DNA of 64,000 nt from Phaeosaccion multiseriatum (GCA_965112735.1 OZ218961.1:1984001-2048000); one strand, 5' to 3'. Counted from the stretch's first letter, positions 4,535 to 23,851 are shown. The notes: generated from the sequence alone by a model not told the origin. Translations and numbers: made by a program.

Positions 4535-5770
4535 GGAGTGGAGGAGTACGACACCGAGGGATGAGGAATGGGCGCATACACACTAAGGGCCCAGAGCCTA
4601 CTAATCCTTCGGGGAAGAGCTGAATAGATCGAAGAAGTCAGGCTCTCTATCTCCCTCCCGGGCTCTTCTTTTTTGGCTGTACTACCGCAGGCAAGGTGGC
4701 CTCCTTTCGAAAGAACAAGAACTGTAAGCGTCGTTTGTGTTTATCATTCCTTTAGTATTTTATTCTTAAGCTCGGAGGCTCGAAGAGCACTGCCACGAAT
4801 GAAGTACGGAGAGCGGAAAAGGAAAGAAATGCCTGCGTCCTCTTCGCCCATCTGCTGCTGCTTTTGCTCTCATCACCCACTCCTCTCCTCTCCTCGCACA
4901 CGCCTCTCCTCCTCGCTAATGTTCTTCGCCAACTACAAACGCCCCTCCTTCTCGCCCGGCCCAACACTTAATCTGTACAACGGTCTTTTCCGCGAAGTCG
5001 CGAGGGGTGTGAAGTGGCAACAAGCGCTCGCGAGAGCTGCCCCTGACCTTGTTGCGCGACTCCCCCAACCCCATCCCCCCCCCCCCCCAAAACAACGAAG
5101 CGAACCACTTACTGGTTCATGCATGCAAGTCTCATCGCTCACTCCACACACGTCACTCAATCTCATCAGAAGGAGCTTTCCGCTGCTTCCCACGCGGCCT
5201 CCTGGATGGCGTCCTGGTCATCGGAAGACGCCGGCGCAGCGGATGCTCCTCCTCCTGCTTTGCCACTCTCCACAGGTACTGGTGAAGGCGCTGGAGCCTC
5301 CTTGGGCTCGTTGGTCAGAACCGTACTCGGTGCTGTTATAGAAGGCATCTTTGTCTATTTGTCTTTTCTTGCTTGCTGCTACTCCTTCTTGACTCGCTGA
5401 TACTGGTCAAATAACTCGTCTCCCTCCCATCCCTCTATGTTTCTGCGAGGCAAGAGGGATCCTGTGAGCAACATCGTTTCTGCGAGGCAAGAGGATTGAT
5501 GTTGCTCGGCGGGAAAGAAACCAAGAAACCAAGAAATCAAGAAATAAGAAAAGGGGGGGGGGGAGTTGGTGATTTGACAGAATCTGTGAGCCGAACGAAT
5601 TTCCAATTTCACCCGCCCCTCCGATCTCGTTCTCGATCTCTGAACACAGACCGCAGCAGCAGCAACTACGACAGAAGAGTCTGCAAGGGAAGCCGCTGCG
5701 AGAGGGAGGGGGTGGCGGGTGGCGAAGTCGTTGACTGCGGCGGAGGAAAGAGTGTGTGGATAGAAAAAGG

Positions 5771-8700
5771 ATGGCAGCCTGGACAGGGGCGGCCAGCCTT
5801 AGGGTAGCCTCAGCGGCGTCTACAGCAGCGGCTGCGGTGGGACGTGGCGCAGCCGCTACTGGTGCTGGTCAGGCGGCAGCGCCTTCGGTCTTGGGAAAGT
5901 CTGGTAGCGCATGCCGAGGGTTGTGCTCGGGGAGAGTAAGGAGAGGAACAGCCTCTACATCATTGAGGGGCAGGCAATGGAGAGACAGGTACGAGTGCTC
6001 ATTTGTCATGTGGGAGATGCAACCTCTCCTGGGGGATGGGATAGGGACTTCCTCTCGCAGCAGTTTGGCTGTCCACCGCGCCGCTTTAACCCAACCAATC
6101 CTGAAGGCCCTCTGCCTCTGAAAGTCTCCCTCGTTGTCTTTCTCGCGCTCCTGATACAGAACCTGGGCACACACAATTTACGGCCCATCCATCATCTATC
6201 CACCCTCTCCCTTAAATCCCCACTCGTCACTTCTTGCTGCGCTCCCTCCTGCCTGCCGCCCATATTCCTTGTCACAGCCCGGCCCAGCGCCGCTGGCCCT
6301 GCCTGCCCCTTGCTGTTGTGCAAGCAACCCACCCACAGCAGGTGCGCGCAACTGAGTGAGAAGCGAAACGAACTGAGGGAAGGAAAGGAGGGGAGAGAGT
6401 CGTTGTCTCTTTCCAATCTTCCAGAGTCTTTCTGAGAAGAAAGAGTTAAGCACCGGCTCCTGCGTGGTAGACCACCGGCAGAGACCATCCACCTACCTGT
6501 CTTCACCTACAAGCAACCAACCAACCAAGCAGCCTCACTATTGACCAACGAAGCCCGTCCCCCCTCCCCAAGCGCCCTGACCAACAACACGCCCCACCCA
6601 TTGCTGCTTGCACGTGCACACACACACACACACGCACGCACACACACACACGCAACACACACACACGCGCACACACACACGCACACACACAGGCTCGCAG
6701 CATGATGATGATGGCCTCCTCCCGTAAGAAGAAGAACGTTACAGCCCCTGCGAACAGCAAACCCGTTCACCACGTCACCTCCGCCATCCGATTAGTCAAG
6801 GAAAATGCCCTCAAAAAGCCGAGAAAGTTCGACGAAACCGTCGAAGTGGCCCTGCACCTGGGCGTCGACCCGCGAAAGCCCAATCAAACGGTCCGGGGCA
6901 CGGTGTCCCTGCCGAGCGGTACGGGTAAGAAGACAGTCATCGCGGTGTTCGCCAAGGGAGATTCCGCGGAGGAAGCGAGGGCAGCAGGGGCGGACATCGT
7001 CGGTGCAGATGACCTTGTTGAGCAGGTGTGTGTACGTGTGTGCGTGTGTATGGTTGTGTGTGTTTGCGTGTGTGTGTGCGCGCGTGTGTGTGTTTGACCT
7101 CCTTCCTGTGCCGCCTCTCCCTGCTGCTCAGTGATACATTCAATCCCCGCCGATCTGTTCCCAGTCTTCAATCTTGATTCTCCCCGCCCCCCCCCCTCCC
7201 TCGCCGTGACGCCCCCCGTAAACCCCTCCTCCTCTCTCTCACATCCTTCTCTCCGTCTCTCGCTCTGTCTCTCGCTTTGCCTCTATCTCTATCTCCCCTT
7301 TGTCTCTCCCTTTGCCTGTCTCTCCCTCTTGGGATCTCCCGCTCCTCCCCTCCCCCTCTCTCCATCGCTTCTACGCACACACCCACCCACACCCACCCCA
7401 CCACCCACCCCACCATCCACCCACCCACCCACCCACACACCCTTACCATACCCTACCATCGACTGCCATCCTCTGGCATTCACTGCCTGTCATCCACTGC
7501 CATGCCCGCAGATCCAAGCAGGCCAGATCAACTTCGACAAGTGTGTGGCCACTCCTGACGTAATGGGCCTCGTGGGCAGGTGCGCAAGGCAGCTCGGACC
7601 CCGGGGGCTCATGCCCAATCCGAAGGTAAGGGTTACGGCGCAGCATCAGCATATATAACCTATTACATAATACTACGAAGTAATACGTAAGAGGCAGAGG
7701 CAGAGGCAGAGGCAGGCTCGAGGGGGAGGGGATGGAGTACTTCAGTTTCAGTTTGTTTCAGTTTGTCGAAGGCCCTCCTGCGCGAAGACAGGGACAGGAG
7801 TGCGTGGTGCGTACTGTATCGGCCTATAGCTTGATTGTTCTCGCTGGCTGCTCAGTTCCTCTGGAGCGGCACGTGTTCTTGCTCGTATTCCCTCCCTCCT
7901 CTGCCCTTCTCTGTCGGCCTTTGTCTCCTACTAACCCCCCCACCCGCCCCCTCCCCCCCCTTCTCCTCCTATCCACCTACTATCGCTTCTATCGCTTCTC
8001 CAGCTGGGCACGGTGACGAGAGACGTGCAGGCGGCTGTGGCGGCGCTGAAGGGAGGTCAGGTGGACTTCCGCGCGGGAAAGCTCGGCCTCATGCACGCAG
8101 GGATTGGCAAGGTGAGTGAGTGAGTGAGTGAGTGAGTGATTGAGTGAGTGAGTGAGTGAGTGAGTGAGTGAGTGGGTGAGTGAGTGAGTGAGTGAGTGAG
8201 TAAGCGAGTGAGTGAGTGAGTGAGTGAGTGGGTGAGTGAGTGAGTGGGTGGGTGAGTGAGTGAGTGAGTGAGTGGGTGAGTGAGTGAGTGAGTGAGTGAG
8301 TGAGTGAGTAAGCGAGTGAGTGAGTGAGTGAGTGAGTGGGTGAGTGAGTGAGTGAGTGAGCGAATGAGTTAGTGAGTGAGTGGGTGAGTGAGTGAGTGAG
8401 GCGGGTGGGTGGAGTGAGGCTGGTGGGTGGAGTGGGTGGTAAGTGAGGAAGGTATAAGTATCCGATAGCTTCTTTCTGAGCCTCGACGAGTGTACGTGTA
8501 CATGTTTTGTGTCTGCCTGTGTGCCTGCTTGATTCGGTGTCGCCTCCTTCCTACTATCACCCACACGCACCCACCCACTTAATCATTGACTTACTACCCA
8601 CCCACCCATTGACTTTTCCCCACAGGTGAGCTTCAGCGTGCAGGAGCTGCAAGACAATCTCCGTGCCTTCATGCTGGCCGTGACCAGCGCCAAGCCCGAG

Positions 8701-8850
8701 GGTGCCAAGGGAAAGTATGTGAGGAACGTGTCTCTGAGCAGCAGCATGGGGCCTGGTGTCAAAGTGGCGTTGGAGACGGCGGATCCGAGCTCACCGAGGT
8801 TTATGTTGGATGAAGAGTTGTATGCGAGGATGAACGCGCAGGGACAATGA
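5771..8850 (+). CDS. rplA: Bacterial-type ribosomal protein L1 (uL1), nucleus-encoded, probably mitochondrial
   Basis: join(5771..5988,6701..7025,7512..7625,8004..8111,8626..8850) is in frame with GT-AG introns. Motifs: [60 protein letters not shown]. Exon 1 ([17 protein letters not shown]...) is Ala/Arg/Ser-rich and poor in acidic residues, like a transit peptide; it is less certain than exons 2-5. Confidence 0.92.
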
Positions 8851-9572
8851 CGGTTTCATGCATGATCCCGTACGCATAATACACATACACACGTACCTAA
8901 TATGTATACACACATACACACACAAGAGAGGGAGGGAGGGAGAGAGAGGCATAGGGATAGAGAGACAGATCGAGAGAGAGAGAGAGAAGGCGGCCGGGTC
9001 AGGAGTGAGTGAGTGAGTGTGTGGGTGAGGTGGGTGTGTGGGTGGGTGAGGTGGGCGAGGTAGGTGGCCGCCGCTGCTGCTACTGAGGACTGGCGATGAT
9101 ATAGTGATTCGTGATCAGAGTGGCGCCCACCCCGTGTGGATTTATTTCAGCGATCCTCAGCAAGGGGTGGGAGGCGCGAGCTGCAGGCTTGAGTAGAGGT
9201 CTCGTATAGTGCCATGGCCTCCATCAGCTTTGAGTAGAGCACCCGATTAGTTTAGTTTAGTCCCTCCCCTCCACCAATTGATAGCAATCATCAGACGGTT
9301 GATCGACACCAACACTCCTGGCGTCCACACTTTTGTCCACGGTTGTCCATCTCACTCTGGGGTGTACCAAACCGCTGAGTCCATTAGTCCCCACGCGTGC
9401 ATTACAGAACACTAGAAGTGCCTTCTATATAATATATATATATAATTTATATATATATGTATACATATGTATTATACATATATATACATATGTATACATA
9501 TGTTGATATGTTGTGAGCTGCTGCTAGGGTAGGGTAGGGTGCAATGGGGGAGCGCCGCTGCGTGTCGTTCAA

Positions 9573-9840
9573 TCGTTTGTGTGGGGTGGGGAGACGAAGC
9601 ATCATCGTCAGTGGCCAAGAGAGCCGCGGCCGCGCTGTCGGGAGGTGAGGAGGTGTAGACCCCACCGCTGCATCTGGGTGCTATTGTGGAGGGTGGCCTT
9701 GCTCACCACCACCCGCCAACTGTGAGAGGTTCAAGTAGAGCCACAGGGGTTACCACTCCGGTGCGACTCACTTGCGCGACGATGCCCTGTGAGTCGGAGG
9801 TGTACAGACAAGGGAGGGAGGGAGGGAGTGAGTCAAAGGG
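9573..9840 (-). pseudogene. Small remnant of a third ligase copy (part of exon 7 plus flanking intron, fused to ligase-downstream-like sequence)
   Basis: 9655-9838 aligns to 27209-27416 (GIVAQVSRTGVVTPVALLEPLTVGG, then a -1 frameshift and TGA). 9573-9646 resembles 15527-15630 and 24532-24635. Confidence 0.85.
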
Positions 9841-9998
9841 GAGCAGGAGCGGAGAGCGTGTGTGTGACCGCTCTGTCGACGACATCTTCACTTTGCTTCA
9901 GTTTACTCGACCCGACAAGTACCAACACATGACGTCACGCACCCTCCCCTCCCCCCTCACCCCACCTGCACTTAAGATGAGCCCCAAGAGGGTTCCGC

Positions 9999-12900
9999 TT
10001 AATACGCGCTGGCCCGGTGTGGATGGTTGGCAGGCAGCACCTCCTCATGAATCGCTATGGCCTTGCGGTAGAGCGCCTCCGCCTCCTCCGCCTTGCCCTG
10101 ATCGCTGAGAAGGTTACCGAGGTTGTGGTACGACATGGCCAGGGCCGGGTGGTTGGCAGGCAGCACCTCCTCAAAAATCGCCATGGCCTTGCGGAAGAGC
10201 GCCTCCGTCTCCTCCGCCTTGCCCTGATCGATGAGAGCGATACCGAGGTTGTGGTACGACACGGCCAGGTCCGGGTGGTTGGCAGGCAGCACCTCCTCAT
10301 GAATCGCCATGGCCTTGCGGTAGAGCGCCTCCGCCTCCTCCGCCTTGCCCTGATCGCGGAGAATGGTACCGAGGTTGTGGTACGACACGACCAGGTCCGG
10401 GTGGTTGGCAGGCAGCACCTCCTCACGAATCGCCATGGCCTTGCGGTAGAGCGCCTCCGCCTCCTCCGCCTTGCCCTGATCGCTGAGAAGGTTACCGAGG
10501 TTGTTGTACGACTTGGCCAGCTCCGGGTGGTTGGCAGGCAGCACCTCCTCACGAATCGCCATGGCCTTGTGGTAGAGCGCCTCCGCCTCCTCCGCCTTGC
10601 CCTGATCGCGGAGAATGGTACCGAGGTTGTTGTATGAGTCAGCCAGGTCCGGGTGGTTGGCAGGCAGCACCTCCTCACGAATCGCCATGGCCTTGCGGTA
10701 GAGCGCCTCCGCCTCCTCCGCCTTGCCCTGATCGCGGAGAATGGTACCGAGGTTGTTGTACGACATGGCCAGGTCCGGGTGGTTGGCAGGCAGCACCTCC
10801 TCATGAATCGCCATGGCCTTGCGGAAGAGCGCCTCCGTCTCCTCCGCCTTGCCCTGATCGCGGAGAATGGTACCGAGGTTGTTGTATGAGTCAGCCAGGT
10901 CCGGGTGGTTGGCACGCAGCACCTCCTCACGAATCGCCATGGCCTTGCGGTAGAGCGCCTCCGCCTCCTCCGCCTTGCCCTGATCGCGGAGAATGGTACC
11001 GAGGTTGTTGTACGACATGGCCAGGTCCGGGTGGTTGGCAGGCAGCACCTCCTCATGAATCGCCATGGCCTTGCGGAAGAGCGCCTCCGTCTCCTCCGCC
11101 TTGCCCTGATCGCTGAGAAGGATACCGAGGTTGTGGTACGACATGGCCAGGTCCGGGTGGTTGGCAGGCAGCACCTCCTCACGAATCGCCATGGCCTTGC
11201 GGAAGAGCGCCTCCGTCTCCTCCGCCTTGCCCTGATCGCTGAGAAAGATACCGAGGTTGTGGTACGACACGGCCAGGTCCGGGTGGTTGGCAGGCAGCAC
11301 CTCCTCACGAATCGCCATGGCCTTGCGGTAGAGCGCCTCCGCCTCCTCCGCCTTGCCCTGATCGCGGAGAATGGTACCGAGGTTGTGGTACGACATGGCC
11401 AGGCTCGGGTGGTTGGCAGGCAGCACCTCCTCATGAATCGCCATGGCCTTGCGGAAGAGCGCCTCCGTCTCCTCCGCCTTGCCCTGATCGCTGAGAGCGA
11501 TACCGAGGTTGTGGTACGACATGGCCAGGTCCGGGTGGTTGGCAGGCAGCACCTCCTCACGAATCGCCATGGCCTTGCGGAAGAGCGCCTCCGTCTCCTC
11601 CGCCTTGCCCTGATCGCTGAGAAGGATACCGAGGTTGTGGTACGACCCGGCCAGGGCCGGGTGGTTGGCAGGCAGCACCTCCTCAAGAATCGCCATGGCC
11701 TTGCGGTAGAGCGCCTCCGCCTCCTCCGCCTTGCCCTGATCGCTGAGAAGGATACCGAGGTTGTTGTACGACATGGCCAGGCTCGGGTGGTTGGCAGGCA
11801 GCACCTCCTCATAAATCGCCATGGCCTTGCGGAGCAGCGCCTCCGCCTCCTCCGCCTTGCCCTGACGGCTGAGAAGGTTACCGAGGTTGCTGTACGAGCT
11901 GGCCAGCTCCAGGTGGTTGGCAGGCAGCACCTCCTCACGAATCGCCATGGCCTTGCGGTAGAGCGCCTCCGCTTCCACGCCTCTCACCACCATGCTAAAT
12001 AACTCAGCACATGACTCCAAATGGCCTGCTCTACTCAACCCCGTTGTGTGAGACTCTTCATCCTTGAGTGACTTCATCACCACGTCCACCACCATGTCCG
12101 ACGACGACTGAGCGAGCTCCCACGTGCTGCGCCAGTACCCGACATACACATATCCACCACCAAGGCCGTACTCTGTGCCGCCAGCCGTGCCACCCTGTTC
12201 AGAATCACTGTCGGCCCACACGTTCCCAGCGATGCACTCCTGCTGGGACAAGAAGCCAGACTGCCGCTCTACAGCTGTCTTCAAGTCCCACTTGTGCATG
12301 TCTGACTTGATGGTATTGGCAATGAAGTCCAGCTGCAGCTCGTGAGGCACCGCACCGCCATGGCCCCACCTCTCCAGCAGAGATCGATCCGCAAGTTGAG
12401 CCACTGCTTCTGCTACTGCAGGCTCGTCATCGGCCCACAACGACCTCAGCATGAGCTCGCTCGCTCCCCTGCCCCTTGGAAGGACGGCCAGGTACAGATA
12501 ACGGCTTTTGAGTGGGTCAGGCAGTGCGTCGATGCTGAGTGTTAGAACCCTGCCCAGCGCGGCCTTCATATTGTCAATCGATCTATCCTCCCTGTTCTCG
12601 CCGAGCCCTTTCTTGATGTCCTGAGCCAAATCGAGCCAGGCTTGCTCCTCATCCGGCTTGCTCTTTACTTGAGGGAGCGACCCGGCCATTGACAGCGCCA
12701 GTGCGTGCCTCCCGCACCACTCTGCAACAAGCAAGATGGCCCTATACAACCCCTCACCATCATCAGGAACGCGAGTGCCAGCTGTGTCCCTCAACAGCAG
12801 CTGCACCGACGCTTTCTCCTCCATGCGCCCCACCTCCACGCAGTCAGACTCCTCTGAGGGGAGCAGCCCCTTGACTCTCGTCGTGACCAGCAGCTGAAGC

Positions 12901-14847
12901 CCCGTCCTGCGGAGCATGCTCAGAACGTCGGCATCCCACACATCGTCTGCAACGCACAAGCATCTCGAGGAGTGCTTATGAACGTGTCTAGCGATCTCAG
13001 AAGCAAAGTCGGAAGCTTCCCGGAAGTGCTGAATATGTTGCGGCCCTTCGTCCGGCAGCCCAAGCCCCACATTCAGACCAAAGTCGTTCATGAGCGTCTG
13101 CATCAGCGACAGGAGCATGTCAGCTTTCCCCTTCTCATCCCCCTCTTCGGCCCCCTCTTGATGCAGCCTCCCCACACGCAGATACAGAATGCCGTTCGTC
13201 TTGAACTGCTTCCGGACGTCGTCCCTCTCAATCACCGCCCGCGCTAGCTCGGACTTGCCCATCCCCCCCGCACCATGGCACACCACCACGGGGAGGAGCG
13301 GCTCGTCCGGAAGCGGCTGCTCCATCTCCGCAATCTCAATGAGTCTTCGCGCTATCTTGTCCTCGATTTCGGCTCTCGGGATGTGCGTTTTGCTGAGACG
13401 TGGGTGGGCTTGGTGCGGAATGGGCGCTTTCTCCCGTTCCTGCCGTTGGGGAGCACGCTGGAGCAACACGGCATTCATCAGACGATTCGTCTCCATCGCC
13501 GTGTCCTTGCTCTCCGTGACGAGACGATTCGTATCCATTGCCCCGCGCTTGCTCTGCGTGACGATTTGCTTCGTCTCCAGTACCGGTGTCATCAAAAAAA
13601 CAAACAAACAAAAAACAACCAAAATGCTCGCCGTGACGATTTGCTTCGTCTCCATTGCCGTGTCCTTGCTCTCCGTGACGATTTGCTTCGTCTCCATTGC
13701 CGCGGCGAACACCTGAGAGGCCATGAAGTTGCTCAAAGTCGACTGAAGCGCGTCTTTGAGCTTCTCAATGTTCCCTTGGAGCGTGGAGGTATTCAGGAAC
13801 TTACGCAGACAGTTCCCAACCAAGAAGTCTTCCGAGATGCCAAACAGTTCTTCCTGCAATGCGTGTAGCGCCTTTCGCAGAGAGCCTCGAATGGTCGAAT
13901 CGGCAGCACCTTCTTGCAAACGCCCCATTTTCTCCACAAAATCTGTCATCTCCTTGGCCTGGACCATTTTCTGCACAAGCTGGAGTAGGTCTTGCTTGGC
14001 GGCTTGTAGCTGCTCATGCTTCAACCAAAGCCCAAACAGAAGGTCGAAGGCCGGCCCGATGCCTGGCACCTCCTGGGCGAACTTGTTGGTCACGTCAACC
14101 ACAACCTTGAGAGCCTGTCCGACCAGGGCAGGAGAGCTGTCCAGCGTTTCCAGCGTTTGAATCAGGCGAGGAGCGCTGTCATTCTTTGATATCATGCTAG
14201 CGAAGTACTCCTCGGCAGCTGTTGCCGTGTGCTCTCCCTCGGCAGGGAACTCCAATCTCCACGTTTTCACGTCAAAACTGCTCTTGTTCTCGGACACAGA
14301 GGCTGAGATGAGCACCAGGCAACCTTGCCCCGGGATTTTTCTGCTCGGAAACACCTGCCAAGGGTTGGTCAAGAGGCAGGCACGCAATATACAAAGCGAG
14401 TGCATCAGCCAGTGACACTTCATTTGAGAGGGAGTGCTTACAGAGAAGGGGGTGGTGGTGTAGGCTATGTGCAGAGAGAAGGTAGCCGAGGGAGGCCACT
14501 CAAGCTGAAGAGGCGCTGTAGTTGGAAAGAGCGGTAAGTGCGAGCAGGGGAGGGAGGAAGGGCGGCAAGGACTGCAGGCAGGGCCTCACCTGGATGAGAT
14601 CTTGCAGTGGCATCACTTTCAGGTCCTGTGTGGTCCCACGTTTGGTCTGGCTATTCCTTCTCCAGAGCTTAGTAGATCCGTCAACGAGGTGCAGTGTTCG
14701 TGTTTTGTCCGTCTTTCCGCTCGCCGCCGTCTTCCGCACCTCCACACCTTTCTCGGATTCCAGAGCCTCCTTAAATCTAACCACATCCCCATCCTGAGCA
14801 CCTCCTGTCCCTGCTCCTCCCGCATCCTGGACCAGCGCTGGCTGCAT
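9999..14847 (-). CDS. NLR-like STAND protein 1: PH-like + helical N-terminal domain + 14-aa repeats + NB-ARC + 15 TPR (42-aa) repeats, ~1537 aa
   Basis: join(complement(14590..14847),complement(9999..14354)) with a phase-0 intron CAG|GTGAGG...TGGCAG|GTG. In-frame TGA TAA lie just upstream of ATG 14847. Walker A CHGAGGMGKS, Walker B CVADDVWD, LLVTTR, CGRHALAL (GLPL-like), PHELQLDF (MHD-like), and a kinesin-light-chain-like TPR array. Confidence 0.9.
10002..11939 (-). repeat. 126-nt coding tandem repeat, 15 full units plus a partial (TPR array of NLR-1)
   Basis: Consensus xEEVLPANHPxLAxSYxNLGxxLxxQGKAEEAEALYRKAMAI with an exact 126-nt period from 11939 to 10050. Confidence 0.97.
13478..13701 (-). 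repeat. 42-nt (14-aa, AMETKQIVTESKDT) coding repeat, about 4-5 units, interrupted by a T-rich insert
   Basis: Visible directly in the translation and DNA (gtgacgatttgcttcgtctccattgccgtgtccttgctctcc on +). Confidence 0.9.
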
Positions 14848-15871
14848 CCGTGCCGCTTATCAGCCCGTGCTGCTGCCCTCCTTCAACTGAGCAGCACCTT
14901 GGCAGCACCCTTTGGAAGAAGGGAAGGGGAGAAAAAAAGAAAGAAAGAACGAACGGCCCAGGCCCAGGCGGATACGGTGAGAAACGATGCAGAGGGTAAA
15001 AGCTAATAATAGTGAAGACAAGGCTGACTGCGACTTTGGGGTTGCTAATACCTTGTCCATGCGTCTACTATTTTGTGTTTTCCGTGTCAGAGATCCTGCT
15101 GCTTCAGGGGGTACGATCGTACGAAACCGCCGAGAGTTCAACCTCTGTTTCGAAGTGTCCACCTACCGGGGGGAAAATGAAGCAGGCCGTCTCGGGCCGG
15201 CCGCCGCGGCGCTAGTCGTGGGGTTCTCTGACTCTCTGACAGCAGCCACGCATGCTGTATGCTCCACCGCCGCTCGGCTGCTCAAAGGCATGCCTTGCCC
15301 AAGTAGCAAAAGCTGGGGGGGGGGGGGGGGGGGGCGGGATATCGGGGCGGGCTGTGTGTGGCCCTGCCTGACCCTTTGCTTGCACATGGCTGCGCTCCAG
15401 TGGACTGCCTCACAAAAGAAGTGCCCGTCACATTACAACATTACTCTGCGTCTCAGCCTATCCATTGCTCAGTGACTCCCTCGGTATGAGCTACGAGAAC
15501 TGGGGGGGGCTGGGAAGCGCTGCTTGTCGTTTGTTTGGGGTGGGGAGACGAAGCATCAATGTCAATAGTGCCCCAGCAAGCCAGCGGGCCAATGACTTGA
15601 AGGCCGCGGCGCCGCGGTGTCGGGAGGTGGCTCGATGCTGGACTCGCTCGGTACGCGAAGGGTTCCAAGGGACATGCGCTCCAGTCGTAGCTACGGTGGC
15701 GATTGGCCTGTGGCACGGCCTTCCTCCCTCCCTCCCTCTCTCCCACCCCTCTGCCTACCTTCCTCCATCGAACGCCCCGAAGCAACCCCTCGCTCTGCCA
15801 AGTGCGTGCCGCTGGCTGTACCACGTACCACCAACTGGCAGGCTGTATCACCAACGGAAGTACACCCGCCT

Positions 15872-18508
15872 CTACCCCTCCCCCGTCCCCTCCCAGCTCA
15901 GCCTCCGTAACCACTCCGCCTCACTCACGCACTCCACCCCCCGCTCCTCTGCCTTCTTGAGCTTTCCCCTAGGGTTGCTGCCCACCACGAGGAGCTGAGT
16001 CTTGCCACTCACTCCGCCCGTCACTCGCGCTCCAAAGCTCTCGGCGAGACGCTTGGCTTCGTCGCGGGGCATCCTGAGGCGAGGAGGAGGGGAAGGAGGC
16101 GGACAGACACACACGCACGCACACACACACACACGCAGAGAGAGAGAGAGGGAGATAGGAGGAGACAGCACCACACAAACGACACACAGAGAGAGCAAAC
16201 GGGGTGGTGGGTCGGTTGGTTGGTCGGTATCCCGTATACCACACAAGTAGAAGCATACAGAAGCCTCTCTCCCTCTCTCACAATCGAGCTTCTTCCTCAA
16301 TCTCAATACAATATCGAGCTTCTTCACATCAAATATCGAGCCCCACATGGTACCACCGCACCTCATACCGCACCGTCCTTCCTGCCTTACGTAATCTTAC
16401 CTCTCCAGTGTGCCCGTAAACACCACGGCCTTGCCTCGCAGCCACTCGCCCGTCAGCCCCTGCCCATACGCCTCTGCATCCCTTCCATCCCTCCTCCCAC
16501 TGCTCCCATCCCCCCCACCACTATTATTGGCGAATGTGAGGTGCTGAGCCAACCCCTCCACCACTTCACAGTTGGCAGCGTCGCTCGCAAACTCCACCAG
16601 AGAACCAACTGCCACAGACACCACCCCGGGGATCACACTGAGCCTCGCCAGTACCTTGCTCTGCTCCAGCACTACCGGCGCCGCCCCTGCTGCTGAGTCA
16701 CCAACTGCTGTATCTATCTCTGCCTGCCCCCTCTTCCCCTCCTCCTTCTGCTGCTCCTCTCGCCCCTCACTACAGCCCTCTTTCGTCCCTTCTGTATCGT
16801 CCAGTGCCGCAGCCGCTGCTGTGGCTTCTCTCCACCACTCCTCAAAGTCTCCTCCGTAGGCCTCGGCGGTGAGCTGGGCCGTCTTGGCCCCGAAGTGACG
16901 GATGCCCAGTGCGTAAATGAAACGCTCCAGACGCACTGAGAGAGAGAGAGAGGGAAAGGGAGGGAGAGAGGGGCGGAGACTCACTCAATTCATTCACTCA
17001 CTCACTCACTCACTGATTCACCCAATCACTCAATCACCCTCTCCCTTCTTCCCTCCCTCTCTTCCTCCCTCCCTCCCTCCCTCCCTCCCTCACTCACTCA
17101 CTCACTCACTCACTCACTCACTCATCACTCACTCACCTACTCACGCACTCACTCACTCACTCACTCACTCACTCACTCACTCACTGATTCACACAATCAC
17201 TCAATCACCCTCTCCGTCCTTCCCTCCCTCTCTCCCTCCCTCAACTCACCCTCTGTACGAGCCCTGTCCACAGCTCTGAGAAGGTTGAAGGCTGAGAGCG
17301 GCCCCCACCCGTCCCTCTCGGCCAAGCTCGAAGGGGGCATGGCGGCAGCGAGGGCCGCGTCCCCTGTCAGAGCCTGGGTGGATGGCAGTGGACGGGAGGG
17401 GATGGCAATGGATGTGGAGGGGGGAGGAGGGGGGTGGAGACGGCAGTGGACGGGGAGGGGGGTAGGGGTGGTTAGTTGAGGTAGGGGAGGGGCACGCGCA
17501 CACTTCACACACACGCGTGCGCACACACACACACACACGCACACACACACACACGCACGCACACACGCACACACAATCACGCACACGTAACACACTCGCC
17601 TTCTTGACCCGTGCCCGCTTGCGCCCCTTGCTCTTGGGAGCGGATTTCGCCCCCGCCCCCTCCCCCTCTCCCTCCCCATCCCCTTTCCCTTCCATCTCCA
17701 CCTCCTCTTGCAGCGGCGGTGGCGGTGGCAGAGCAGTGGTCTCTCTCAGCCGGAAGAGGTCGACGGGGCTGGTAACGATGCCTGCGTCAAAGAGCTCCTG
17801 TAGTTTGTTGCCTCCGATGCCCTTAATGTCCATCCCATCACGGCTCACAAAGTGCCTCAGACGCTGCACAGCCTGGGCAGAGCAGCGCAGACCCGCGGGA
17901 CAGCGGGTGGCCACTTCTCCGCCTGCCTCCTCCTCCTCGTCGTCGTCGCCGTCCTCGTCCTTGTCCCCCTCCTTCAGCTGTTGCTGTTGCTGCTGCTGCT
18001 CTTTCTCGACTGGGAAACCCTCGCCTCCTTCTCCCCCCGTGCTGCCCATATGACTGGCCGGACTGCCTTGTATCAGCTCCGTGCCGCAAGCAGGGCAGTG
18101 CGTGGGCAGCCTCAGAGGCGGGCCTCTCGAGTCGGAAACCGAGGCATTATCGACATCATCAACATCGACATCGATATCGACACCAATATCGACCCCGGCT
18201 TGACCTGCCTGGCTCCTCTCCTCGCGCTCCTCCTCAGTCGGCACAACCCTCACCACCTGAGGAATGACGTCACCCGCCCGCCTGACGACGACTCTGTCAC
18301 CCTCACGTAGACCCAACCGCTGCATCTGGGTGCTACACTGTATTGTGGAGGGTGGCCTTGCTCACCACCACCCGCCAACTGTGGGAGGTTCAAGTAGAGC
18401 CACAGGGGCTACCACTCCGGTGCGACTCACTTGCGCGACGATGCCCTGTGAGTCGGAGGTGTACAGACAAGGGAGGGAGGGAGGGAGGGAGGGAGGGAGT
18501 CAAAGAGA
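15872..18508 (-). pseudogene. 5'-truncated duplicate of the NAD+-dependent DNA ligase (OB, Zn finger, HhH and BRCT exons only)
   Basis: Near-identical to 24948-27416 but lacks the adenylation domain. A -1 deletion (~18371) gives GGG TGG TGG TGA, and there is a 7-nt insertion at ~18336. Downstream exons 17600-18325, 17250-17373, 16401-16935 and 15872-16073 stay open and keep their splice sites. Confidence 0.88.
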
Positions 18509-18665
18509 GCAGGAGCGGAGAGCGTGTGTGTGACCGCTTTGTCGACGACATCTTCACTTTGCTTCAGTTTACTCGGACCCGACAAGTACCAACACATGAC
18601 GTCACGCACCCTCCCCTCCCCCCTCACCCCACCTGCATTTAAAATGAGCCTCAAGAGGGTTCCGC

Positions 18666-21600
18666 TTAATACGCGCTGGCCCGGTGCGGATGGTTGGCAG
18701 ACACCGCCCCCTCACCAATCGCCATCGCCTTCCGGTAGAGCGCCTCCGCCTCCTCCGCCTTGCCCTGATCGCTGAGAAGGTTACCGAGGTTGCTGTACGA
18801 CATGGCCAGGTCCGGGTGGTTGGCAGGCAGCACCTCCTCAAAAATCGCCATGGCCTTGCGGTAGAGCGCCTCCGCCTCCTCCGCCTTGCCCTGCTTTCTG
18901 AGAAATAAGCCGAGGTTGTTGTACGACATGGCCAGGTCCGGGTGGTTGGCAGGCAGCACCTCCTCACAAATTGCCATGGCCTTGCGGTAGAGCGCCTCCG
19001 CCTCCTCCGCCTTGCCCTGATCGCTGAGAAGGATACCGAGGTTGCTGTACGACCTGGCCAGGTGCGGGTGGTTGGCAGGCAGCACCTCCTGATAAATCGC
19101 CATGGCCTTGCGGTAGAGCGCCTCCGCCTCGTCCGCCTTGCCCTGACCGCTGAGAAATAAGCCGAGGTTGTTGTACGACATGGCCTGGTACGGGTGGTTG
19201 GCAGGCAGCACCTCCTCATAAATCGCCATGGCCTTGCGGTAGAGCGCCTCCGCCTCCTCCGCCTTGCCCTGACCGCTGAGAATGGTACCGAGGTTATTGT
19301 ATGACATAGCCAGGTCCGGGTGGTTGGCAGGCAGCACCTCCTCATAAGTCGCCATGGCCTTGCGGTACAGCGCCTCCGCCTCCTCCGCCTTGCCCTGACC
19401 GCTGAGAAGGGATCCGAGTTCGATGTATGAGTCAGCCAGGTCCGGGTGGTTGGCAGGCAGCACCTCCTCACGAATCGCCATGGCCTTGCGGTAGAGCGCC
19501 TCCGCCTCCTCCGCCTTGCCCTGATCGCTGAGAAGGGTACCGAGGTTGCTGTACGACCTGGCCAGGTGCGGGTGGTTGGCAGGCAGCACCTCCTCATAAA
19601 TCGCCATGGCCTTGCGGTAGAGCGCCTCCGCCTCCTCCGCCTTGCCCTGATCGCTGAGAAGGGTACCGAGGTTGCTGTACGACCTGGCCAGGTGCGGGTG
19701 GTTGGCAGGCAGCACCTCCTCACGAATCGCCATGGCCTTGCGGTAGAGCGCCTCCGCCTCCTCCGCCTTGCCCTGATCGCTGAGAAGGGTACCGAGGTTG
19801 CTGTACGACCTGGCCAGGTGCGGGTGGTTGGCAGGCAGCACCTCCTCATGAATCGCCATGGCCTTGCGGTAGAGCGCCTCCGCCTCCTCCGCCTTGCCCT
19901 GATCGCTGAGAAGGGTACCGAGGTTGCTGTACGACATGGCCAGGTGCGGGTGGTTGGCAGGCAGCACCTCCTCACGAATCGCCATGGCCTTGCGGTAGAG
20001 CGCCTCCGCCTCCTCCGCCTTGCCCTGATCGTGGAGAAGGGTACCGAGGTTGTTGTATGAGTCAGCCAGGTACGGGTGGTTGGCAGGCAGCACCTCCTCA
20101 AGAACCGCCATGGCCTTGCGGCTGAGCGCCTCCGCCTCCTCCGCCTTGCCCTGATCGTGGAGAAAGGTACCGAAGTTGTTGTACGACATGGCCAAGTCCG
20201 GGTGGTTGGCAGGCAGCACCTCCTCACGAATCGCCATGGCCTTGCGGTAGAGCGCCTCCGCCTCCTCCGCCTTGCCCTGCTTCGCGAGAAGGATACCGAG
20301 GTTGTGGTACGACCCGGCCAGGTGCGGGTGGTTGGCAGGCAGCACCTCCTCAAAAATCGCCATGGCCTTGCGGTAGAGCGCCTCCGCCTCCTCCGCCTTG
20401 CCCTGATCGCTGAGAAGGTTACCGAGGTTGCTGTACGACCTGGCCAGGTGCGGGTGGTTGGCAGGCAGCACCTCCTCACGAATCGCCATGGCCTTGCGGT
20501 AGAGCGCCTCCGCCTCCTCCGCCTTGCCCTGATCGTGGAGAATGGTACCGAGGTTGTTGTACGACATGGCCAAGTCCGGGTGGTTGGCAGGCAGCACCTC
20601 CTCACGAATCGCCATGGCCTTGCGGTAGAGCGCCTCCGCCTCCTCCGCCTTGCCCTGATTGCGGAGAAGGGCACCGAGGTTGTTGTACGAGGTGGCCAGG
20701 TCCGGGTGGTTGGCAGGCAGCACCTCCTCATAAATCGCCATGGCCTCGCGGGAGATCACCACTGCTTCCACGCCTCTCACTACCATGTCAAATAACTGAG
20801 CACATGACGCCAAATGGTGTGCTCTACTCAACCCCGTTGTGTGAGGCTCTTCCTCCTCGACTGACTTCATCACCACGTCCACCACCATGTCCGACGACGA
20901 CTGAGCGAGCTCCCACGTGCTGCGCCAGTACCCGACATACACATATCTGCCACCAAGGCCGTACTCTGTGCCGCCAACCGTGCCATCCTGTTTAGAACCA
21001 GTGTTGGTCCACACGTTCCCCATGATGCACTCCCGCTGGGACAAGAAGCCAGACTGCCGCTCTACAGCTGTCTTCAAGTCCCACTTGTGCATGTCTGACT
21101 TGATGGTATTGGCAATGAAGTCCAGCTGCAGCTCGTGAGGCACCGCACCGCCATGGCCCCACCTCTCCAGCAGAGATCGATCCGCAAGTTGAGCCACTGC
21201 TTCTGCTACTGCAGGCTCGTCATCGGCCCACAACGACCTCAGCATGAGCTCGCTCGCTCCCCTGCCCCTTGGAAGGACGGCCAGGTACAGATAACGGCTT
21301 TTGAGTGGGTCAGGCAGTGCGTCGATGCTGAGTGTTAGAACCCTGCCCAGCGCGGCCTTCATATTGTCAATCGATCTATCCTCCCTGTTCTCGCCGAGCC
21401 CTTTCTTGATGTCCTGAGCCAAGTCGAGCCAGGCTTGCTCCTCATCCGGCTTGCTCTTTACTTGAGGGAGCGACCCGGCCATTGACAGCGCTAGTGCGTG
21501 CCTCCCGCACCACTCTGCAACAATCAAGATGGCCCTATACAACCCCTCACCAACATCAGGAACGCGAGTGCCAGCTGTGTCCCTGAGCAGCAGCTGCACC

Positions 21601-23851
21601 GACGCTTTCTCCTCCATGCGCCCCACCTCCACGCAGTCAGACTCCTCTGAGGGGAGCAGCCCCTTGACTCTCGTCGTGACCAGCAGCTGAAGCCCCGTCC
21701 TGCGGAGCATGCTCAGAACGTCGGCATCCCACACATCGTCTGCAACGCACAAGCATCTCGAGGAGTGCTTATGAACGTGTGTGGCGATCGCAGAAGCAAA
21801 GTCGGAAGCTTCCCGGAAGTGCTGAATATGTTGCGGCCCTTCGTCCGGCAGCCCAAGCCCCACATTCAGACCAAAGTCGTTCATGAGCGTCTGCATCAGC
21901 GACAGGAGCATGTCAGCTTTCCCCTTCTCATCCCCCTCTTCGCCCCCCTCTTGATGCAGCCTCCCCACACGCAGATACAGAATGCCGTTCTTCTTGAACT
22001 GCTTCCGGACGTCGTCCCTCTGAATCACGGCCCGCGCTAGCTCGGACTTGCCCATCCCCCCCGCACCATGGCACACCACCACGGGGAGGAGCGGCTCCTC
22101 CGGAAGCGGCTGCTCCATCTCCGCAATCTCAATGAGTCTTCGCGCTATCTTGTCCTCGATTTCGGCCCTCGGGATGTGCGTTTTGCTGAGACGTGGGTGG
22201 GCTTGGTGCGGAATGGGCGCTTTCTCCCGTTCCTGCCGTTGGGGAGCACGCTGGAGCAACACGGCATTCATCAGACGATTCGTCTCCATTGCCGTGTCCT
22301 TGCTCTCCGTGACGAGACGATTCGTATCCATTGCCCCGCGCTTGCTCTGCGTGACGATTTGCTTCGTCTCCAGTACCGGTGTCATCAAAAAAACAAACAA
22401 ACAAAAAACAACAAAAATGCTCGCCGTGACGATTTGCTTCGTCTCCATTGCCGTGTCCTTGCTCTCCGTGACGATTTGCTTCGTCTCCATTGCCGTGTCC
22501 TTGCTCTCCGTGACGATTTGCTTCGTCTCCATTGCCGTGTCCTTGCTCTCCGTGACGATTTGCTTCGTCTTCATTAACGTGTCCTTGCTCGCCGTGACGA
22601 TTTGCTTCGTCTCCATTGCCGTGTCCTTGCTCTCCGTGACGATTTGCTTCGTCTCCACTAACATGTCATTGCTCTCCGTGACGATTTGATTCGTCTCCAT
22701 TGCCGCGGCGAACACCTGAGAGGCCATGAAGTTGCTCAAAGTCGACTGAAGCTCGCGTCCGAGCTTGTCAATGTTCCCTTGGAGCGTGGAGGTATTCAGG
22801 AATTTACGCCACCAGCTCCCAACCAAGAAGTCTTCCGAGATACCAAACAGTTCTTCCTGCAATGCGTGTAGCGCCTTTTGCAGAGAGCCTCGAATGGTCG
22901 AATCGGCAGCACCTTTTTGCAAACGCCTCATTTTGTCCACAAACCCTGTCATCTCCTCGGCCTGGACCATTTTCTGCACAAGCTGGAGTAGGTCTTGCTT
23001 GGCGGCTTGAAGCTGCTCCTGCTTCAACCAAAGCCCAAACAGAAGGTCGAAGGCCGGCCCGATGCCTGGCACCTCCTGGGCGAACTTGTTGGTCACCTCA
23101 AGCACAACGCTGAGAGCCTGTCCGAACAGGACAGGGGAGCTGTCCAGCGTTGCCAGCGTTTGGATCAAGCGAGGAGCGCTGTCATTCGTTGATATCATGC
23201 TAGCGAAGTACTTCTCGGCAGCTGTGGCCGTGTGCTCTCCCTCGGCAGCAGGGAACTCCAATCTCCACGTTTCCACGTCAAAACTGCGGTCGTTCGTGGA
23301 CACAGAGGCTGAGATAAGCACCAGGCAACCTTGCTTCGGGATTCTTCTGCTCGGAAACACCTGCCAAGGGTTGGTCAAGAGGCAGGCACACAACATACAA
23401 AGCGAGTGCATCAGCCAGTGACACTTCATTTGAGAGGGGGCTTACAGAGAAGGGGGTGGTGGTGTAGGCTATGTGCAGAGAGAAGGTAGCCGAGGGAGGC
23501 CACTCAAGCTGAAGAGGCGCTGTAGTTGGAAAGAGCGGTAAGTGCGAGCAGGGGAGGGAGGAAGGGCGGCAAGGACTGCAGGCAGGGCCTCACCTGGATA
23601 AGATCTTGCAGTGGCATCACTTTCAGGTCCTGTGTGGTCCCACGTTTGGTCTGGCTTTTCCTTCTCCAGAGCTTAGTAGATCCGTCAACGAGGTGCAGTG
23701 TTCGTGTTTTGTCCGTCTTTCCGCTCGCCGCCGTCTTCCGCACCTCCACACCTTTCTCGGATTCCAGAGCCTCCTTAAATCTAACCACATCCCCATCCTG
23801 AGCACCTCCTGTCCCTGCTCCTCCCGCATCCTGGACCAGCGCTGGCTGCAT
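18666..23851 (-). CDS. NLR-like STAND protein 2 (paralogue), same architecture with 16 TPR repeats, ~1650 aa
   Basis: join(complement(23594..23851),complement(18666..23360)) with the same NB-ARC motifs. It is 113 aa longer than NLR-1: 5 extra 14-aa units, 1 extra TPR and 1 further aa. Confidence 0.9.
18669..20732 (-). repeat. 126-nt coding tandem repeat, 16 full units plus a partial (TPR array of NLR-2)
   Basis: Exact 126-nt period from 20732 to 18717, same consensus as the NLR-1 array. Confidence 0.97.
22270..22704 (-). repeat. 42-nt (14-aa) coding repeat, about 9-10 units
   Basis: Six full AMETKQIVTESKDT-type units precede the T-rich insert, against one in NLR-1. Confidence 0.9.

What the first reader, a model, noticed from the sequence alone, without database searches (positions are those of the whole stretch)
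10002..20732. TPR arrays with a hypervariable code at about 8 positions on an almost invariant DNA scaffold
Seen: across the 31 full 126-nt units, the scaffold and most synonymous sites are nearly fixed. Repeat positions 1 (R/H/Y/F/L/C), 11 (D/H/S/A/E/Y), 14 (M/V/G/D/K/R/S/T), 17 (N/H/S/I), 21 (N/I/T/A/S/L), 22 (L/I/A/F), 24 (S/R/H/I/A) and 25 (D/R/N/K/G) vary, mostly at codon positions 1-2 (position 1: CGT/CAT/TAT/TTT/CTT/TGT). The spacing 11-14-17-21-24/25 places them on one helix face. Established: this pattern of concerted evolution plus diversifying selection is typical of fungal NLR repeat domains. Brown-algal NB-ARC-TPR genes are reported to diversify through one-repeat-per-exon shuffling, whereas here each array lies inside a single exon. 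Inference: a reprogrammable ligand-binding groove.
Basis: partly seen in the sequence, partly recalled or inferred. Interest (0 to 1): 0.8.

Follow-up and report, generated by a model that had tools for sequence, protein, structure and literature searches.

The report
Algal immune-type receptors with variable TPR groove
Two neighbouring genes of a stramenopile alga encode NLR-like receptors whose sensor is a row of near-identical 42-residue TPR repeats that differ mainly at eight groove-lining residues under strong positive selection, a pattern already known from fungal and brown-algal receptors.

Summary
On the minus strand lie two tandem paralogues, g1 (9999-14357) and g2 (18666-23363). Each has an N-terminal helical region, an NB-ARC domain and 15 or 16 full 126-nt TPR_10 units.

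Across the 31 units:
- 78 of 102 scaffold bases never vary, and 72% of pairwise differences fall in 24 bases, codons 1, 11, 14, 17, 21, 22, 24 and 25.
- Nucleotide identity (92%) exceeds amino-acid identity (84%).
- At the eight codons dN is 0.51 against dS 0.07. The scaffold has omega 0.45.
- My own M7/M8 test gives 2dlnL 80.8 with omega about 9. Three null simulations with recombination gave 3.4 or less.

An AF2 model (pLDDT 94) puts seven of the sites on one 160-degree face of helix A. An ungapped alignment to kinesin light chain 1 places 11 of its 15 cargo-contact residues on seven of the eight sites.

The same positions vary in two further paralogues 170 kb away, in an unrelated NB-ARC-TPR gene on another contig, and in a Nemacystus homologue. 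The nearest NB-ARC relatives are brown-algal (31-37% identity). There the units sit on separate exons, checked in Choristocarpus; here the arrays have no introns.

Verdict: a real and clean new member of a known kind. Population polymorphism, ligand and immune function remain untested.

The parts
9999..14357 (-). g1: last coding exon of NLR-like gene 1. It holds the N-terminal helical region, the 14-aa repeats, NB-ARC and the TPR array. Stop codon at 9999-10001.
   Evidence: Continuous ORF. Pfam NB-ARC E 9e-12 and TPR_10 E 4e-214. Upstream limit is the splice acceptor at 14358, supported by spliced contigs in run X5.
10050..11939 (-). g1 TPR array: 15 full 126-nt units (u01 = 11814-11939 to u15 = 10050-10175). 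In a unit whose highest coordinate is hi, codon k occupies hi-3k+1 to hi-3k+3.
10002..10049 (-). g1 C-terminal partial unit (cap), conserved in all four paralogues (ends ...ANHPHRASAY, or ...ANHPHRTSAY in g4)
11940..12035 (-). g1 N-terminal capping helices and partial unit preceding the array
   Evidence: helices H2-15 and H19-36 of the model
12552..13298 (-). g1 NB-ARC domain (P-loop GMGKS, Walker B DDVWD, LLVTTR)
   Evidence: Pfam PF00931, residues 376-624. Motifs read in the translation.
13480..13695 (-). g1 42-nt (14-aa, METKQIVTESKDTA-like) linker repeats, interrupted by a T-rich hydrophobic insert at 13588-13625
   Evidence: The insert is present in an RNA-derived contig of X5 (record 21).
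14358..14587 (-). Intron (GT..AG on the minus strand) separating an upstream exon from the large exon of g1
   Evidence: Sequence. Loose ends of X5 contigs at 14357 and 14587 read straight into each other's exon, and X5 has zero depth in 14376-14542.
18666..23363 (-). g2: last coding exon of NLR-like gene 2, same architecture as g1. Stop codon at 18666-18668.
   Evidence: 92-94% nucleotide identity to the g1 locus, flanks included.
18717..20732 (-). g2 TPR array: 16 full 126-nt units (u01 = 20607-20732 to u16 = 18717-18842)
18669..18716 (-). g2 C-terminal partial unit (cap)
21345..22112 (-). g2 NB-ARC domain
   Evidence: Pfam PF00931, residues 440-695
22273..22705 (-). g2 42-nt linker repeats (about 9 copies, against about 4 in g1)

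Best explanation
g1 and g2 are young tandem paralogues of a STAND/NLR-like receptor. It combines an N-terminal helical region of unresolved fold, an NB-ARC nucleotide switch and a C-terminal sensor of 15-16 kinesin-light-chain-type 42-residue TPR units.

Shown:
- The units share an almost invariant DNA scaffold.
- They differ at eight codons whose side chains lie on the exposed face of helix A (seven sites) and at the end of helix B (position 1). These are the positions that line the concave peptide-binding groove in KLC1.
- Those codons evolve at omega about 9, while the scaffold is under purifying selection (omega 0.45).
- The arrays of the four paralogues differ in unit number (15, 16, 7, 10) and in unit order. 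The terminal units and the flanks remain alike.

Inferred mechanism:
- The near-identical intronless units promote unequal crossing-over, slippage and gene conversion within and between arrays. This duplicates, deletes and reshuffles units.
- Point mutations at groove positions are kept by diversifying selection. Each array therefore presents a new composite binding groove.
- Binding of a non-self or modified-self protein or peptide in the groove would release the NB-ARC switch and trigger oligomerisation and an N-terminal effector. This step is inferred only by analogy with fungal, plant and animal NLRs.
For: - Architecture.
- Unit census and codon tables.
- Selection:
  - NG86.
  - Site models: M1a/M2a 2dlnL 67.8. 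M7/M8 80.8, with omega 9.0 on 20% of sites and NEB above 0.99 at 1, 11, 14, 21, 22, 24, 25.
  - Star tree: 143, including position 17.
  - Tree-free count: 36 extra amino-acid states against 2 extra synonymous codons at the eight codons, versus 16 against 9 in the scaffold, Fisher p 0.0045.
  - Three null simulations with block-wise recombination gave LRTs of 3.4, 0.6 and 0.0.
- Structure:
  - AF2 pLDDT 93.7, with helix A at unit positions 10-25. The variable residues span a 160-degree arc and the fixed residues the opposite face.
  - The closest solved folds are KLC1/KLC2 TPR, with TM up to 0.89.
  - In an ungapped alignment, 11 of the 15 KLC1 residues that contact JIP1/TorsinA (PMC6214655) fall on positions 1, 14, 17, 21, 22, 24, 25. 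Overlap by position is 7 of 9, hypergeometric p 1e-5.
- Replication:
  - Paralogues g3/g4: M7/M8 2dlnL 40.5.
  - Unrelated gene g5 on contig 9: variable at 1, 2, 14, 17, 18, 24, 25.
  - Nemacystus homologue: variable at 1, 11, 21, 24, 25, 36.
- Turnover:
  - 29 distinct 8-residue codes in 31 units. g1_u08 is identical to g1_u10, and g3_u01 to g4_u01. g1 u08-u11 shows a two-unit periodicity.
  - The nearest-neighbour unit lies in the same gene 59% of the time, against 26% by chance.
- Expression: spliced contigs in run X5.
Against: - No ligand, no phenotype and no population data, so the immune role is by analogy only.
- NB-ARC and linker evolve at omega 0.7-1.2 between paralogues. This could mean relaxed constraint on the genes as a whole.
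- The N-terminal 'effector' could not be identified. Pfam found nothing, the atlas gave only a weak MLKL_N lead (0.88), and the AF2 model had pLDDT 43.
- The site models assume one tree for sequences that recombine. The hypervariable set was partly chosen by looking at the same data. I ran only three null simulations.
- Exposure on the concave face rests on homology to KLC1 and on helix geometry. I had no coordinates to measure it.
Confidence: 0.72

Rival explanations
1. Fixed-function scaffold. Each unit keeps its own specific groove residues because the array binds one constant partner. Gene conversion erases neutral divergence everywhere else. The excess of non-synonymous differences would then reflect conserved unit identity, not diversifying selection.
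For: Gene conversion or recent duplication clearly homogenises the scaffold. The terminal units are conserved between paralogues.
Against: - The arrays of paralogues whose NB-ARC differ by dS 0.03-0.07 are not collinear. They carry 15, 16, 7 and 10 units and almost no shared internal codes (44 distinct codes in 48 units).
- Hypervariable dN is as high within an array as between arrays.
Confidence: 0.1
2. Relaxed constraint or incipient pseudogenes. The family is dispensable, and the variable positions are simply the surface sites free to drift.
For: Omega is near 1 in NB-ARC and the N-terminal region between paralogues. A truncated copy exists at C12:2165340.
Against: - Drift gives omega of at most 1, not about 9.
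- The scaffold has omega 0.45.
- The ORFs of 1474-1587 codons are intact, and the NB-ARC motifs are intact.
- The transcript is spliced and present in an RNA-type run.
Confidence: 0.06
3. Targeted mutagenesis. A DGR-like, deaminase-like or repeat-induced mutation process hits fixed places of the repeat DNA, and the pattern is mutational rather than selective.
For: Variation is extremely localised. DGR diversification of putative sensors is known in bacteria (PMC10907252, listed).
Against: - Third codon positions inside the variable codons are 4-fold less diverse than positions 1-2.
- Codons without any A vary freely (CGT to CAT/TAT/TTT/CTT/TGT; CTT to ATT/TTT/GCT).
- The same protein positions vary in g5 and in Nemacystus, on quite different DNA scaffolds.
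- There is no C-to-T spread over the scaffold, as repeat-induced mutation would give.
Confidence: 0.03
4. Assembly artefact. The arrays are collapsed or chimeric products of assembling near-identical repeats.
For: Near-identical tandem units are hard to assemble. No single contig or read spanning an array was available.
Against: - Units differ on average at about 8% of bases, and nearly every unit is unique. Long-read assembly is therefore well determined.
- The 42-codon register is perfect and the frames stay open over 2 kb.
- Unit-specific words are held by runs of two other studies (58-70% of sampled words).
- Four paralogous arrays show the same design.
Confidence: 0.03

Closest known systems
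Fungal NLRs with highly internally conserved TPR, ANK or WD repeats (Podospora nwd/het-e family; NB-ARC-TPR genes such as Pa_2_10340). Dyrka et al. 2014, PMC4986451.
   Same: - NB-ARC plus 42-residue TPR units inside one exon.
- Very high unit-to-unit identity.
- Positive selection confined to a few positions that map to the concave face when modelled on kinesin light chain.
- Differences in unit number.
   Different: - The organism is a stramenopile alga, not a fungus.
- The NB-ARC is closest to brown-algal proteins, not fungal ones.
- Repeat-number polymorphism between individuals is not shown here, and no link to allorecognition is shown.
- RIP, invoked in fungi, shows no signature here.
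- Eight strongly supported sites here, against three reported for the Podospora TPR locus.
Brown-algal NB-ARC-TPR candidate pathogen receptors (Ectocarpus). Zambounis et al. 2012, PMC3341825.
   Same: - Homologous NB-ARC (best hits 31-37% identity to Sphacelaria, Nemacystus, Ectocarpus, Choristocarpus and Cladosiphon).
- 126-nt, 42-aa TPR units.
- Gene clustering.
- Positive selection on the units.
- Nemacystus P0009/P0157 shows the same near-identical units, variable at the same positions.
   Different: - Brown algae carry one unit per exon. In Choristocarpus the exons are about 126-135 nt, separated by introns of about 260-340 nt, with boundaries near the A/B turn.
- Here each whole array is a single uninterrupted exon. 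Reshuffling must therefore work by homologous misalignment of coding repeats, not through introns.
- Identity to any brown-algal protein is low.
Kinesin light chain TPR domain (KLC1/KLC2; PDB 6FUZ, 7AI4, 3NF1)
   Same: - Same 42-residue TPR_10/TPR_12 repeat, in ungapped register at 31-36% identity, with TM up to 0.89.
- The variable positions here are the cargo-contacting positions there.
- Position 17 is the Asn/Ser switch (KLC1 N343, KLC2 S328) that sets isoform specificity.
   Different: - KLC has six diverged repeats, a fixed set of cargo motifs and no NB-ARC.
- It shows no internal DNA conservation and no diversifying selection.
Modular repeat codes (TALE RVDs, PPR, PUF)
   Same: Near-identical tandem units that differ at a few fixed positions.
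   Different: Those read nucleic acids, one unit per base, with a deciphered code. Here nothing shows one-unit-to-one-residue reading, and the fold is a protein- or peptide-binding TPR.

Membership tests
STAND / NLR-like NB-ARC-TPR receptors | Central NB-ARC NTPase with P-loop and Walker B | tested here: met
   PF00931, E 9e-12 and 3e-11, above the cut-off. GMGKS, DDVWD and LLVTTR are read in the translations. The MHD-like motif reads PHE.
STAND / NLR-like NB-ARC-TPR receptors | C-terminal superstructure-forming repeat sensor | tested here: met
   TPR_10 E 4e-214 and 2e-221. AF2 superhelix with pLDDT 93.7.
STAND / NLR-like NB-ARC-TPR receptors | N-terminal effector or signalling domain | tested here: inconclusive
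   No Pfam hit at E below 0.08. Atlas lead to MLKL_N at only 0.88. The AF2 model has pLDDT 43.
STAND / NLR-like NB-ARC-TPR receptors | Ligand-triggered oligomerisation and an immune or cell-death output | not testable with these tools
   Needs biochemistry and genetics.
Fungal-type 'highly conserved repeat' NLRs (Dyrka 2014) | Internal repeat identity of about 85% or more over at least 100 aa | tested here: met
   Mean amino-acid identity is 84-85% within each array over 630-670 aa, right at the threshold. Nucleotide identity is 91-93%.
Fungal-type 'highly conserved repeat' NLRs (Dyrka 2014) | Positive selection restricted to a few positions on the binding surface | tested here: met
   and the KLC1 mapping
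Fungal-type 'highly conserved repeat' NLRs (Dyrka 2014) | Repeat-number polymorphism between individuals | not testable with these tools
   Only short Logan contigs were available. Paralogues differ in unit number (15/16/7/10), but that is not population polymorphism.
Brown-algal NB-ARC-TPR family (Zambounis 2012) | Homologous NB-ARC and 126-nt TPR units | tested here: met
   After a multi-NB-ARC Vigna protein that ranks first on summed score, the top hits of an exhaustive HMMER search are brown-algal proteins at 31-37% identity. Unit length is 126 nt.
Brown-algal NB-ARC-TPR family (Zambounis 2012) | One TPR unit per exon (exon shuffling) | tested here: not met
   The arrays here are uninterrupted ORFs with perfect 42-codon spacing. 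The Choristocarpus homologue has separate unit-sized exons.
Diversity-generating retroelement targets | Adenine-specific substitutions copied from a template repeat by a reverse transcriptase | tested here: not met
   Variable codons without A vary freely, and there is no A bias. I did not search for a reverse transcriptase or a template repeat.

The most novel reading that the evidence does not exclude
The intronless, near-identical arrays may be reshuffled during mitotic growth, or at high frequency per generation. A clonal algal population would then carry a repertoire of receptor variants, as Zambounis et al. speculated for brown algae. And/or the eight positions may form a modular code in which successive units read successive residues of an extended peptide ligand.
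Probability: 0.07. Interest if true: 0.85.

Novelty: new member of a known kind. Interest (0 to 1): 0.42.

Why it matters
- It extends a receptor design beyond fungi and brown algae. The design is an invariant TPR scaffold with a few groove residues under diversifying selection, on near-identical tandem units. Here it appears in a small-genome stramenopile alga that is related only distantly to brown algae at this locus.
- The same algal receptor family can hold its repeats either one per exon (brown algae) or as a single exon (here). Exon-intron structure is therefore not essential to the diversification mode.
- Nearly all variable positions coincide with known cargo-contact residues of kinesin light chain. 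This gives a concrete, testable map of the presumed binding groove.
- With five such genes in a 67-Mb genome, the organism could be a tractable system for asking what algal NLR-like proteins recognise.

Tried and rejected
- Population polymorphism. They carry no usable information on array length or order. Most 'other letters' are paralogue cross-mapping.
- Metagenome scan with a 27-nt invariant scaffold word: no match.
- Word-based protein search on the NB-ARC part: only two hits of 27-28% identity, bacterial-type or unattributed, and no self hit. The exhaustive search was needed to see the brown-algal kinship.
- N-terminal domain. Pfam, the atlas and AF2 all failed to give a confident fold. 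The MAFFT alignment with brown-algal N-termini is poor.
- Parallel null simulations timed out or were killed. Only three sequential simulations finished.
- Divergent TPR matches on C14 and C9:3.53 Mb show no 126-nt tandem array and were dropped.
- I never had model coordinates, so burial and exposure were not computed directly.
All searches used single-exon references.


Full report
**What is there.**
The window is G000:C12:1984001-2048000 of a 67-Mb, 22-contig eukaryotic genome. Tandem Repeats Finder reports two 126-nt arrays. One is at 10010-11976 (15.6 copies, 93% matches) and the other at 18677-20755 (16.5 copies, 91%). Both lie in long minus-strand ORFs, 9999-14423 (1474 aa) and 18666-23429 (1587 aa). 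Pfam finds NB-ARC (E 9e-12 and 3e-11) followed by TPR_10/TPR_12 (E down to 1e-221) in each.

The two loci are tandem duplicates. They are 92-94% identical from at least 15500 to 9655, flanks included. The first 22 codons of each ORF are intron read-through. A GT..AG intron at 14358-14587 is supported by spliced contigs in run X5, which also lacks the intron sequence. The gene is therefore transcribed and has at least one upstream exon.

**Check of the observation.**
Anchoring on the ANH motif gives spacings of exactly 42 codons. There are 15 + 16 = 31 full units, plus a conserved C-terminal partial unit in each gene.
- 78 of 102 scaffold bases are invariant, against 2 of 24 in the eight codons.
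- 72% of all pairwise differences fall in those 24 bases.
- Nucleotide identity between units (92%) exceeds amino-acid identity (84%).
- Diversity by codon position is 0.43/0.40/0.11 in the eight codons and 0.025/0.024/0.037 in the scaffold.

Positions 36 and 32 vary moderately as well.

**Selection.**
- *Nei-Gojobori.* The eight codons have dN 0.51 and dS 0.07. The scaffold has dN 0.022 and dS 0.050, so omega 0.45.
- *Site models.* PAML and HyPhy are not installed. I wrote Goldman-Yang site models with F3x4 frequencies, a FastTree topology and one branch-scale parameter.
  - M1a against M2a gives 2dlnL 67.8.
  - M7 against M8 gives 80.8, with omega 9.0 on 20% of sites.
  - Posterior is above 0.99 at 1, 11, 14, 21, 22, 24, 25 and 0.92 at 36.
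  - A star tree gives 143 and also includes position 17.
- *Tree-free count.* The eight codons show 36 extra amino-acid states against 2 extra synonymous codons. The scaffold shows 16 against 9 (Fisher p 0.0045).
- *Null simulations.* Recombination inflates such tests. I simulated data under the fitted M7 (omega at most 1), with a different tip shuffling for each third of the unit. Three runs gave LRTs of 3.4, 0.6 and 0.0. That number of simulations is small, but the gap to 80.8 is very large.

**Structure.**
An AF2 model of the g1 cap plus eight units has pLDDT 93.7. Helix A covers unit positions 10-25, helix B covers 29-42 plus 1-4 of the next unit, and the loop is 5-9. On helix A the variable residues (11, 14, 17, 21, 22, 24, 25) occupy a 160-degree arc. 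The fixed residues (12, 13, 15, 16, 19, 20, 23) occupy the opposite face.

Foldseek's closest compact matches are KLC1/KLC2 TPR domains, with TM up to 0.89 and 31-36% identity. phmmer aligns six units to KLC1 without a gap, and query index + 200 equals the KLC1 residue number.

The KLC1 residues reported to contact JIP1 and TorsinA peptides are N259, R266, N301, N302, V305, K309, Y313, R327, K340, N343, N344, L347, L348, N351 and N386 (PMC6214655). They map to unit positions 17, 24, 17, 18, 21, 25, 29, 1, 14, 17, 18, 21, 22, 25 and 18.
- Eleven of the fifteen fall on hypervariable positions.
- By position the overlap is 7 of 9 (p 1e-5).
- Position 18 is the conserved Asn of the 'asparagine ladder'.
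- Position 17 is the N343/S328 switch that sets KLC isoform specificity.
- Only position 11 has no listed KLC counterpart.

The variable sites therefore line the presumed concave binding groove. This rests on homology and helix geometry, because I had no coordinates.

**Replication elsewhere.**
- *Paralogues g3 and g4.* The genome holds two more paralogues 170 kb downstream in inverted orientation, with 7 and 10 units, plus a truncated copy. Their units give M7/M8 2dlnL 40.5 at positions 1, 14, 21, 22, 24 (and 11 at posterior 0.69).
- *Gene g5.* An unrelated NB-ARC-TPR gene on contig 9 has 37% NB-ARC identity and a different unit sequence. It carries 11 near-identical 126-nt units, variable at 1, 2, 14, 17, 18, 24, 25 and 38 (2dlnL 18.7).
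- *Relatives in other organisms.* An exhaustive HMMER search with the NB-ARC part finds no relative above 37% identity. Apart from a multi-NB-ARC Vigna protein that ranks first on summed score, the best hits are brown-algal proteins from Sphacelaria, Nemacystus, Ectocarpus, Choristocarpus and Cladosiphon.
- *Nemacystus.* Its homologue has near-identical units, variable at 1, 11, 21, 24, 25, 36 and 37.
- *Choristocarpus.* Its homologue has unit-sized exons separated by introns, as published for Ectocarpus (PMC3341825).

This supports 'stramenopile alga', as another agent of the scan wrote. I could not name the organism.

**Turnover.**
- NB-ARC dS between the four paralogues is 0.03-0.07, with omega 0.7-1.2.
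- Scaffold dS among units is 0.026 within g1, 0.074 within g2 and 0.049 between them.
- The arrays nevertheless carry 29 different eight-residue codes in 31 units, and 44 in 48.
- The arrays are not collinear except at their ends.
- They contain identical non-adjacent units (g1_u08 = g1_u10; g3_u03 = g3_u06), a unit shared between genes (g3_u01 = g4_u01) and a two-unit periodicity in g1 u08-u11.
- A unit's nearest neighbour is in the same gene 59% of the time, against 26% by chance.
- Neighbouring variable positions are linked in two blocks, 11-14-17 and 21-22-24-25. This suggests exchange inside units as well.

These facts fit unequal crossing-over or gene conversion together with selection for new groove residues. 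Scaffold dS is in the same range as the age of the paralogues. Long-running concerted evolution therefore cannot be told apart from recent bursts of amplification on this genome alone. The same state recurs in g5 and in Nemacystus, which favours a persistent process; that is an inference.

**Rivals.**
- *Fixed unit identities kept by purifying selection.* This is contradicted by the non-collinear arrays of very young paralogues.
- *Drift.* It cannot give omega of about 9.
- *Site-directed mutagenesis.* Third codon positions are quiet, there is no base bias, and the same protein positions vary on different DNA scaffolds.
- *Mis-assembly.* It is unlikely. The units are nearly all unique, the frames are perfect, and unit-specific words occur in runs of other studies. 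No spanning read was available, however.

**Comparison and verdict.**
The design matches fungal NLRs with highly conserved 42-residue TPR units and groove-restricted positive selection (PMC4986451). By descent the genes belong with the brown-algal NB-ARC-TPR genes, but without their one-unit-per-exon structure. I found no paper describing this for a stramenopile outside the brown algae in the library searched.

It is a clean, well-supported new member of a known kind. The immune function, the ligand, the N-terminal effector and population-level variability remain open.

Noticed in passing
window 9786-9964 (minus strand): A 179-nt GT..AG intron lies about 35 nt downstream of the g1 stop codon. 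It is seen as a joint (9785 to 9965) in one contig of the RNA-type run X5, at word depth 649. So g1 has a 3'-UTR intron.
   Followed up: partly
window 13480-13695 and 22273-22705 (minus strand): A 42-nt (14-aa, METKQIVTESKDTA-like) tandem repeat sits between the N-terminal region and NB-ARC. g1 has about 4 copies and g2 about 9, making it a second length-variable module in the same genes.
   Followed up: partly
window 13588-13625 (and the same place in g2): A T-rich in-frame insert inside the 14-aa repeats encodes a 17-residue hydrophobic stretch (ILVVFCLFVFLM...). An X5 contig covers it without a gap, so it seems to be exonic. It could be a membrane segment or an unspliced mini-intron.
   Followed up: partly
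G000:C12:2170385-2172764 and 2176587-2179331 (L044, L039); fragment at 2165340-2165645 (L038): Two more paralogues (7 and 10 TPR units) lie in inverted orientation 170 kb downstream, plus a copy truncated inside NB-ARC. Their first TPR units are identical to each other.
   Followed up: yes
G000:C9:1888000-1896000 (L040), minus strand: A second, unrelated NB-ARC-TPR gene (961-aa ORF, NB-ARC 37% identical) has 11 near-identical 126-nt units on a different scaffold sequence. It is variable at largely the same repeat positions.
   Followed up: yes
window 12040-14357 against 20830-23363: Between paralogues, NB-ARC plus linker evolves at omega about 1 (dS 0.03, dN 0.03) and the N-terminal region at omega about 1.2. 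The TPR scaffold has omega 0.45, so it is the most constrained part of the protein.
   Followed up: partly
window 10017-12002 and 19446-20795, plus strand and other frames: Long stop-free ORFs run antisense and out of frame through the arrays, for example 10905-12002 (+, 365 aa) and 18602-20731 (-, 709 aa). They are by-products of repeating a stop-free unit, not genes.
   Followed up: no
window 9700-10033 and 12039-12679: A run labelled 'plant metagenome' (X6) holds near-identical low-depth contigs (0-4 differences) of the unique parts of g1. The alga, or a very close strain, therefore occurs in that environmental sample.
   Followed up: no
L045 (Choristocarpus contig, gene 1001-13014): In this early-branching brown alga the exon boundaries of the TPR units fall near unit position 26, the turn between helices A and B. 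Each exon therefore encodes helix B of one repeat plus helix A of the next.
   Followed up: partly
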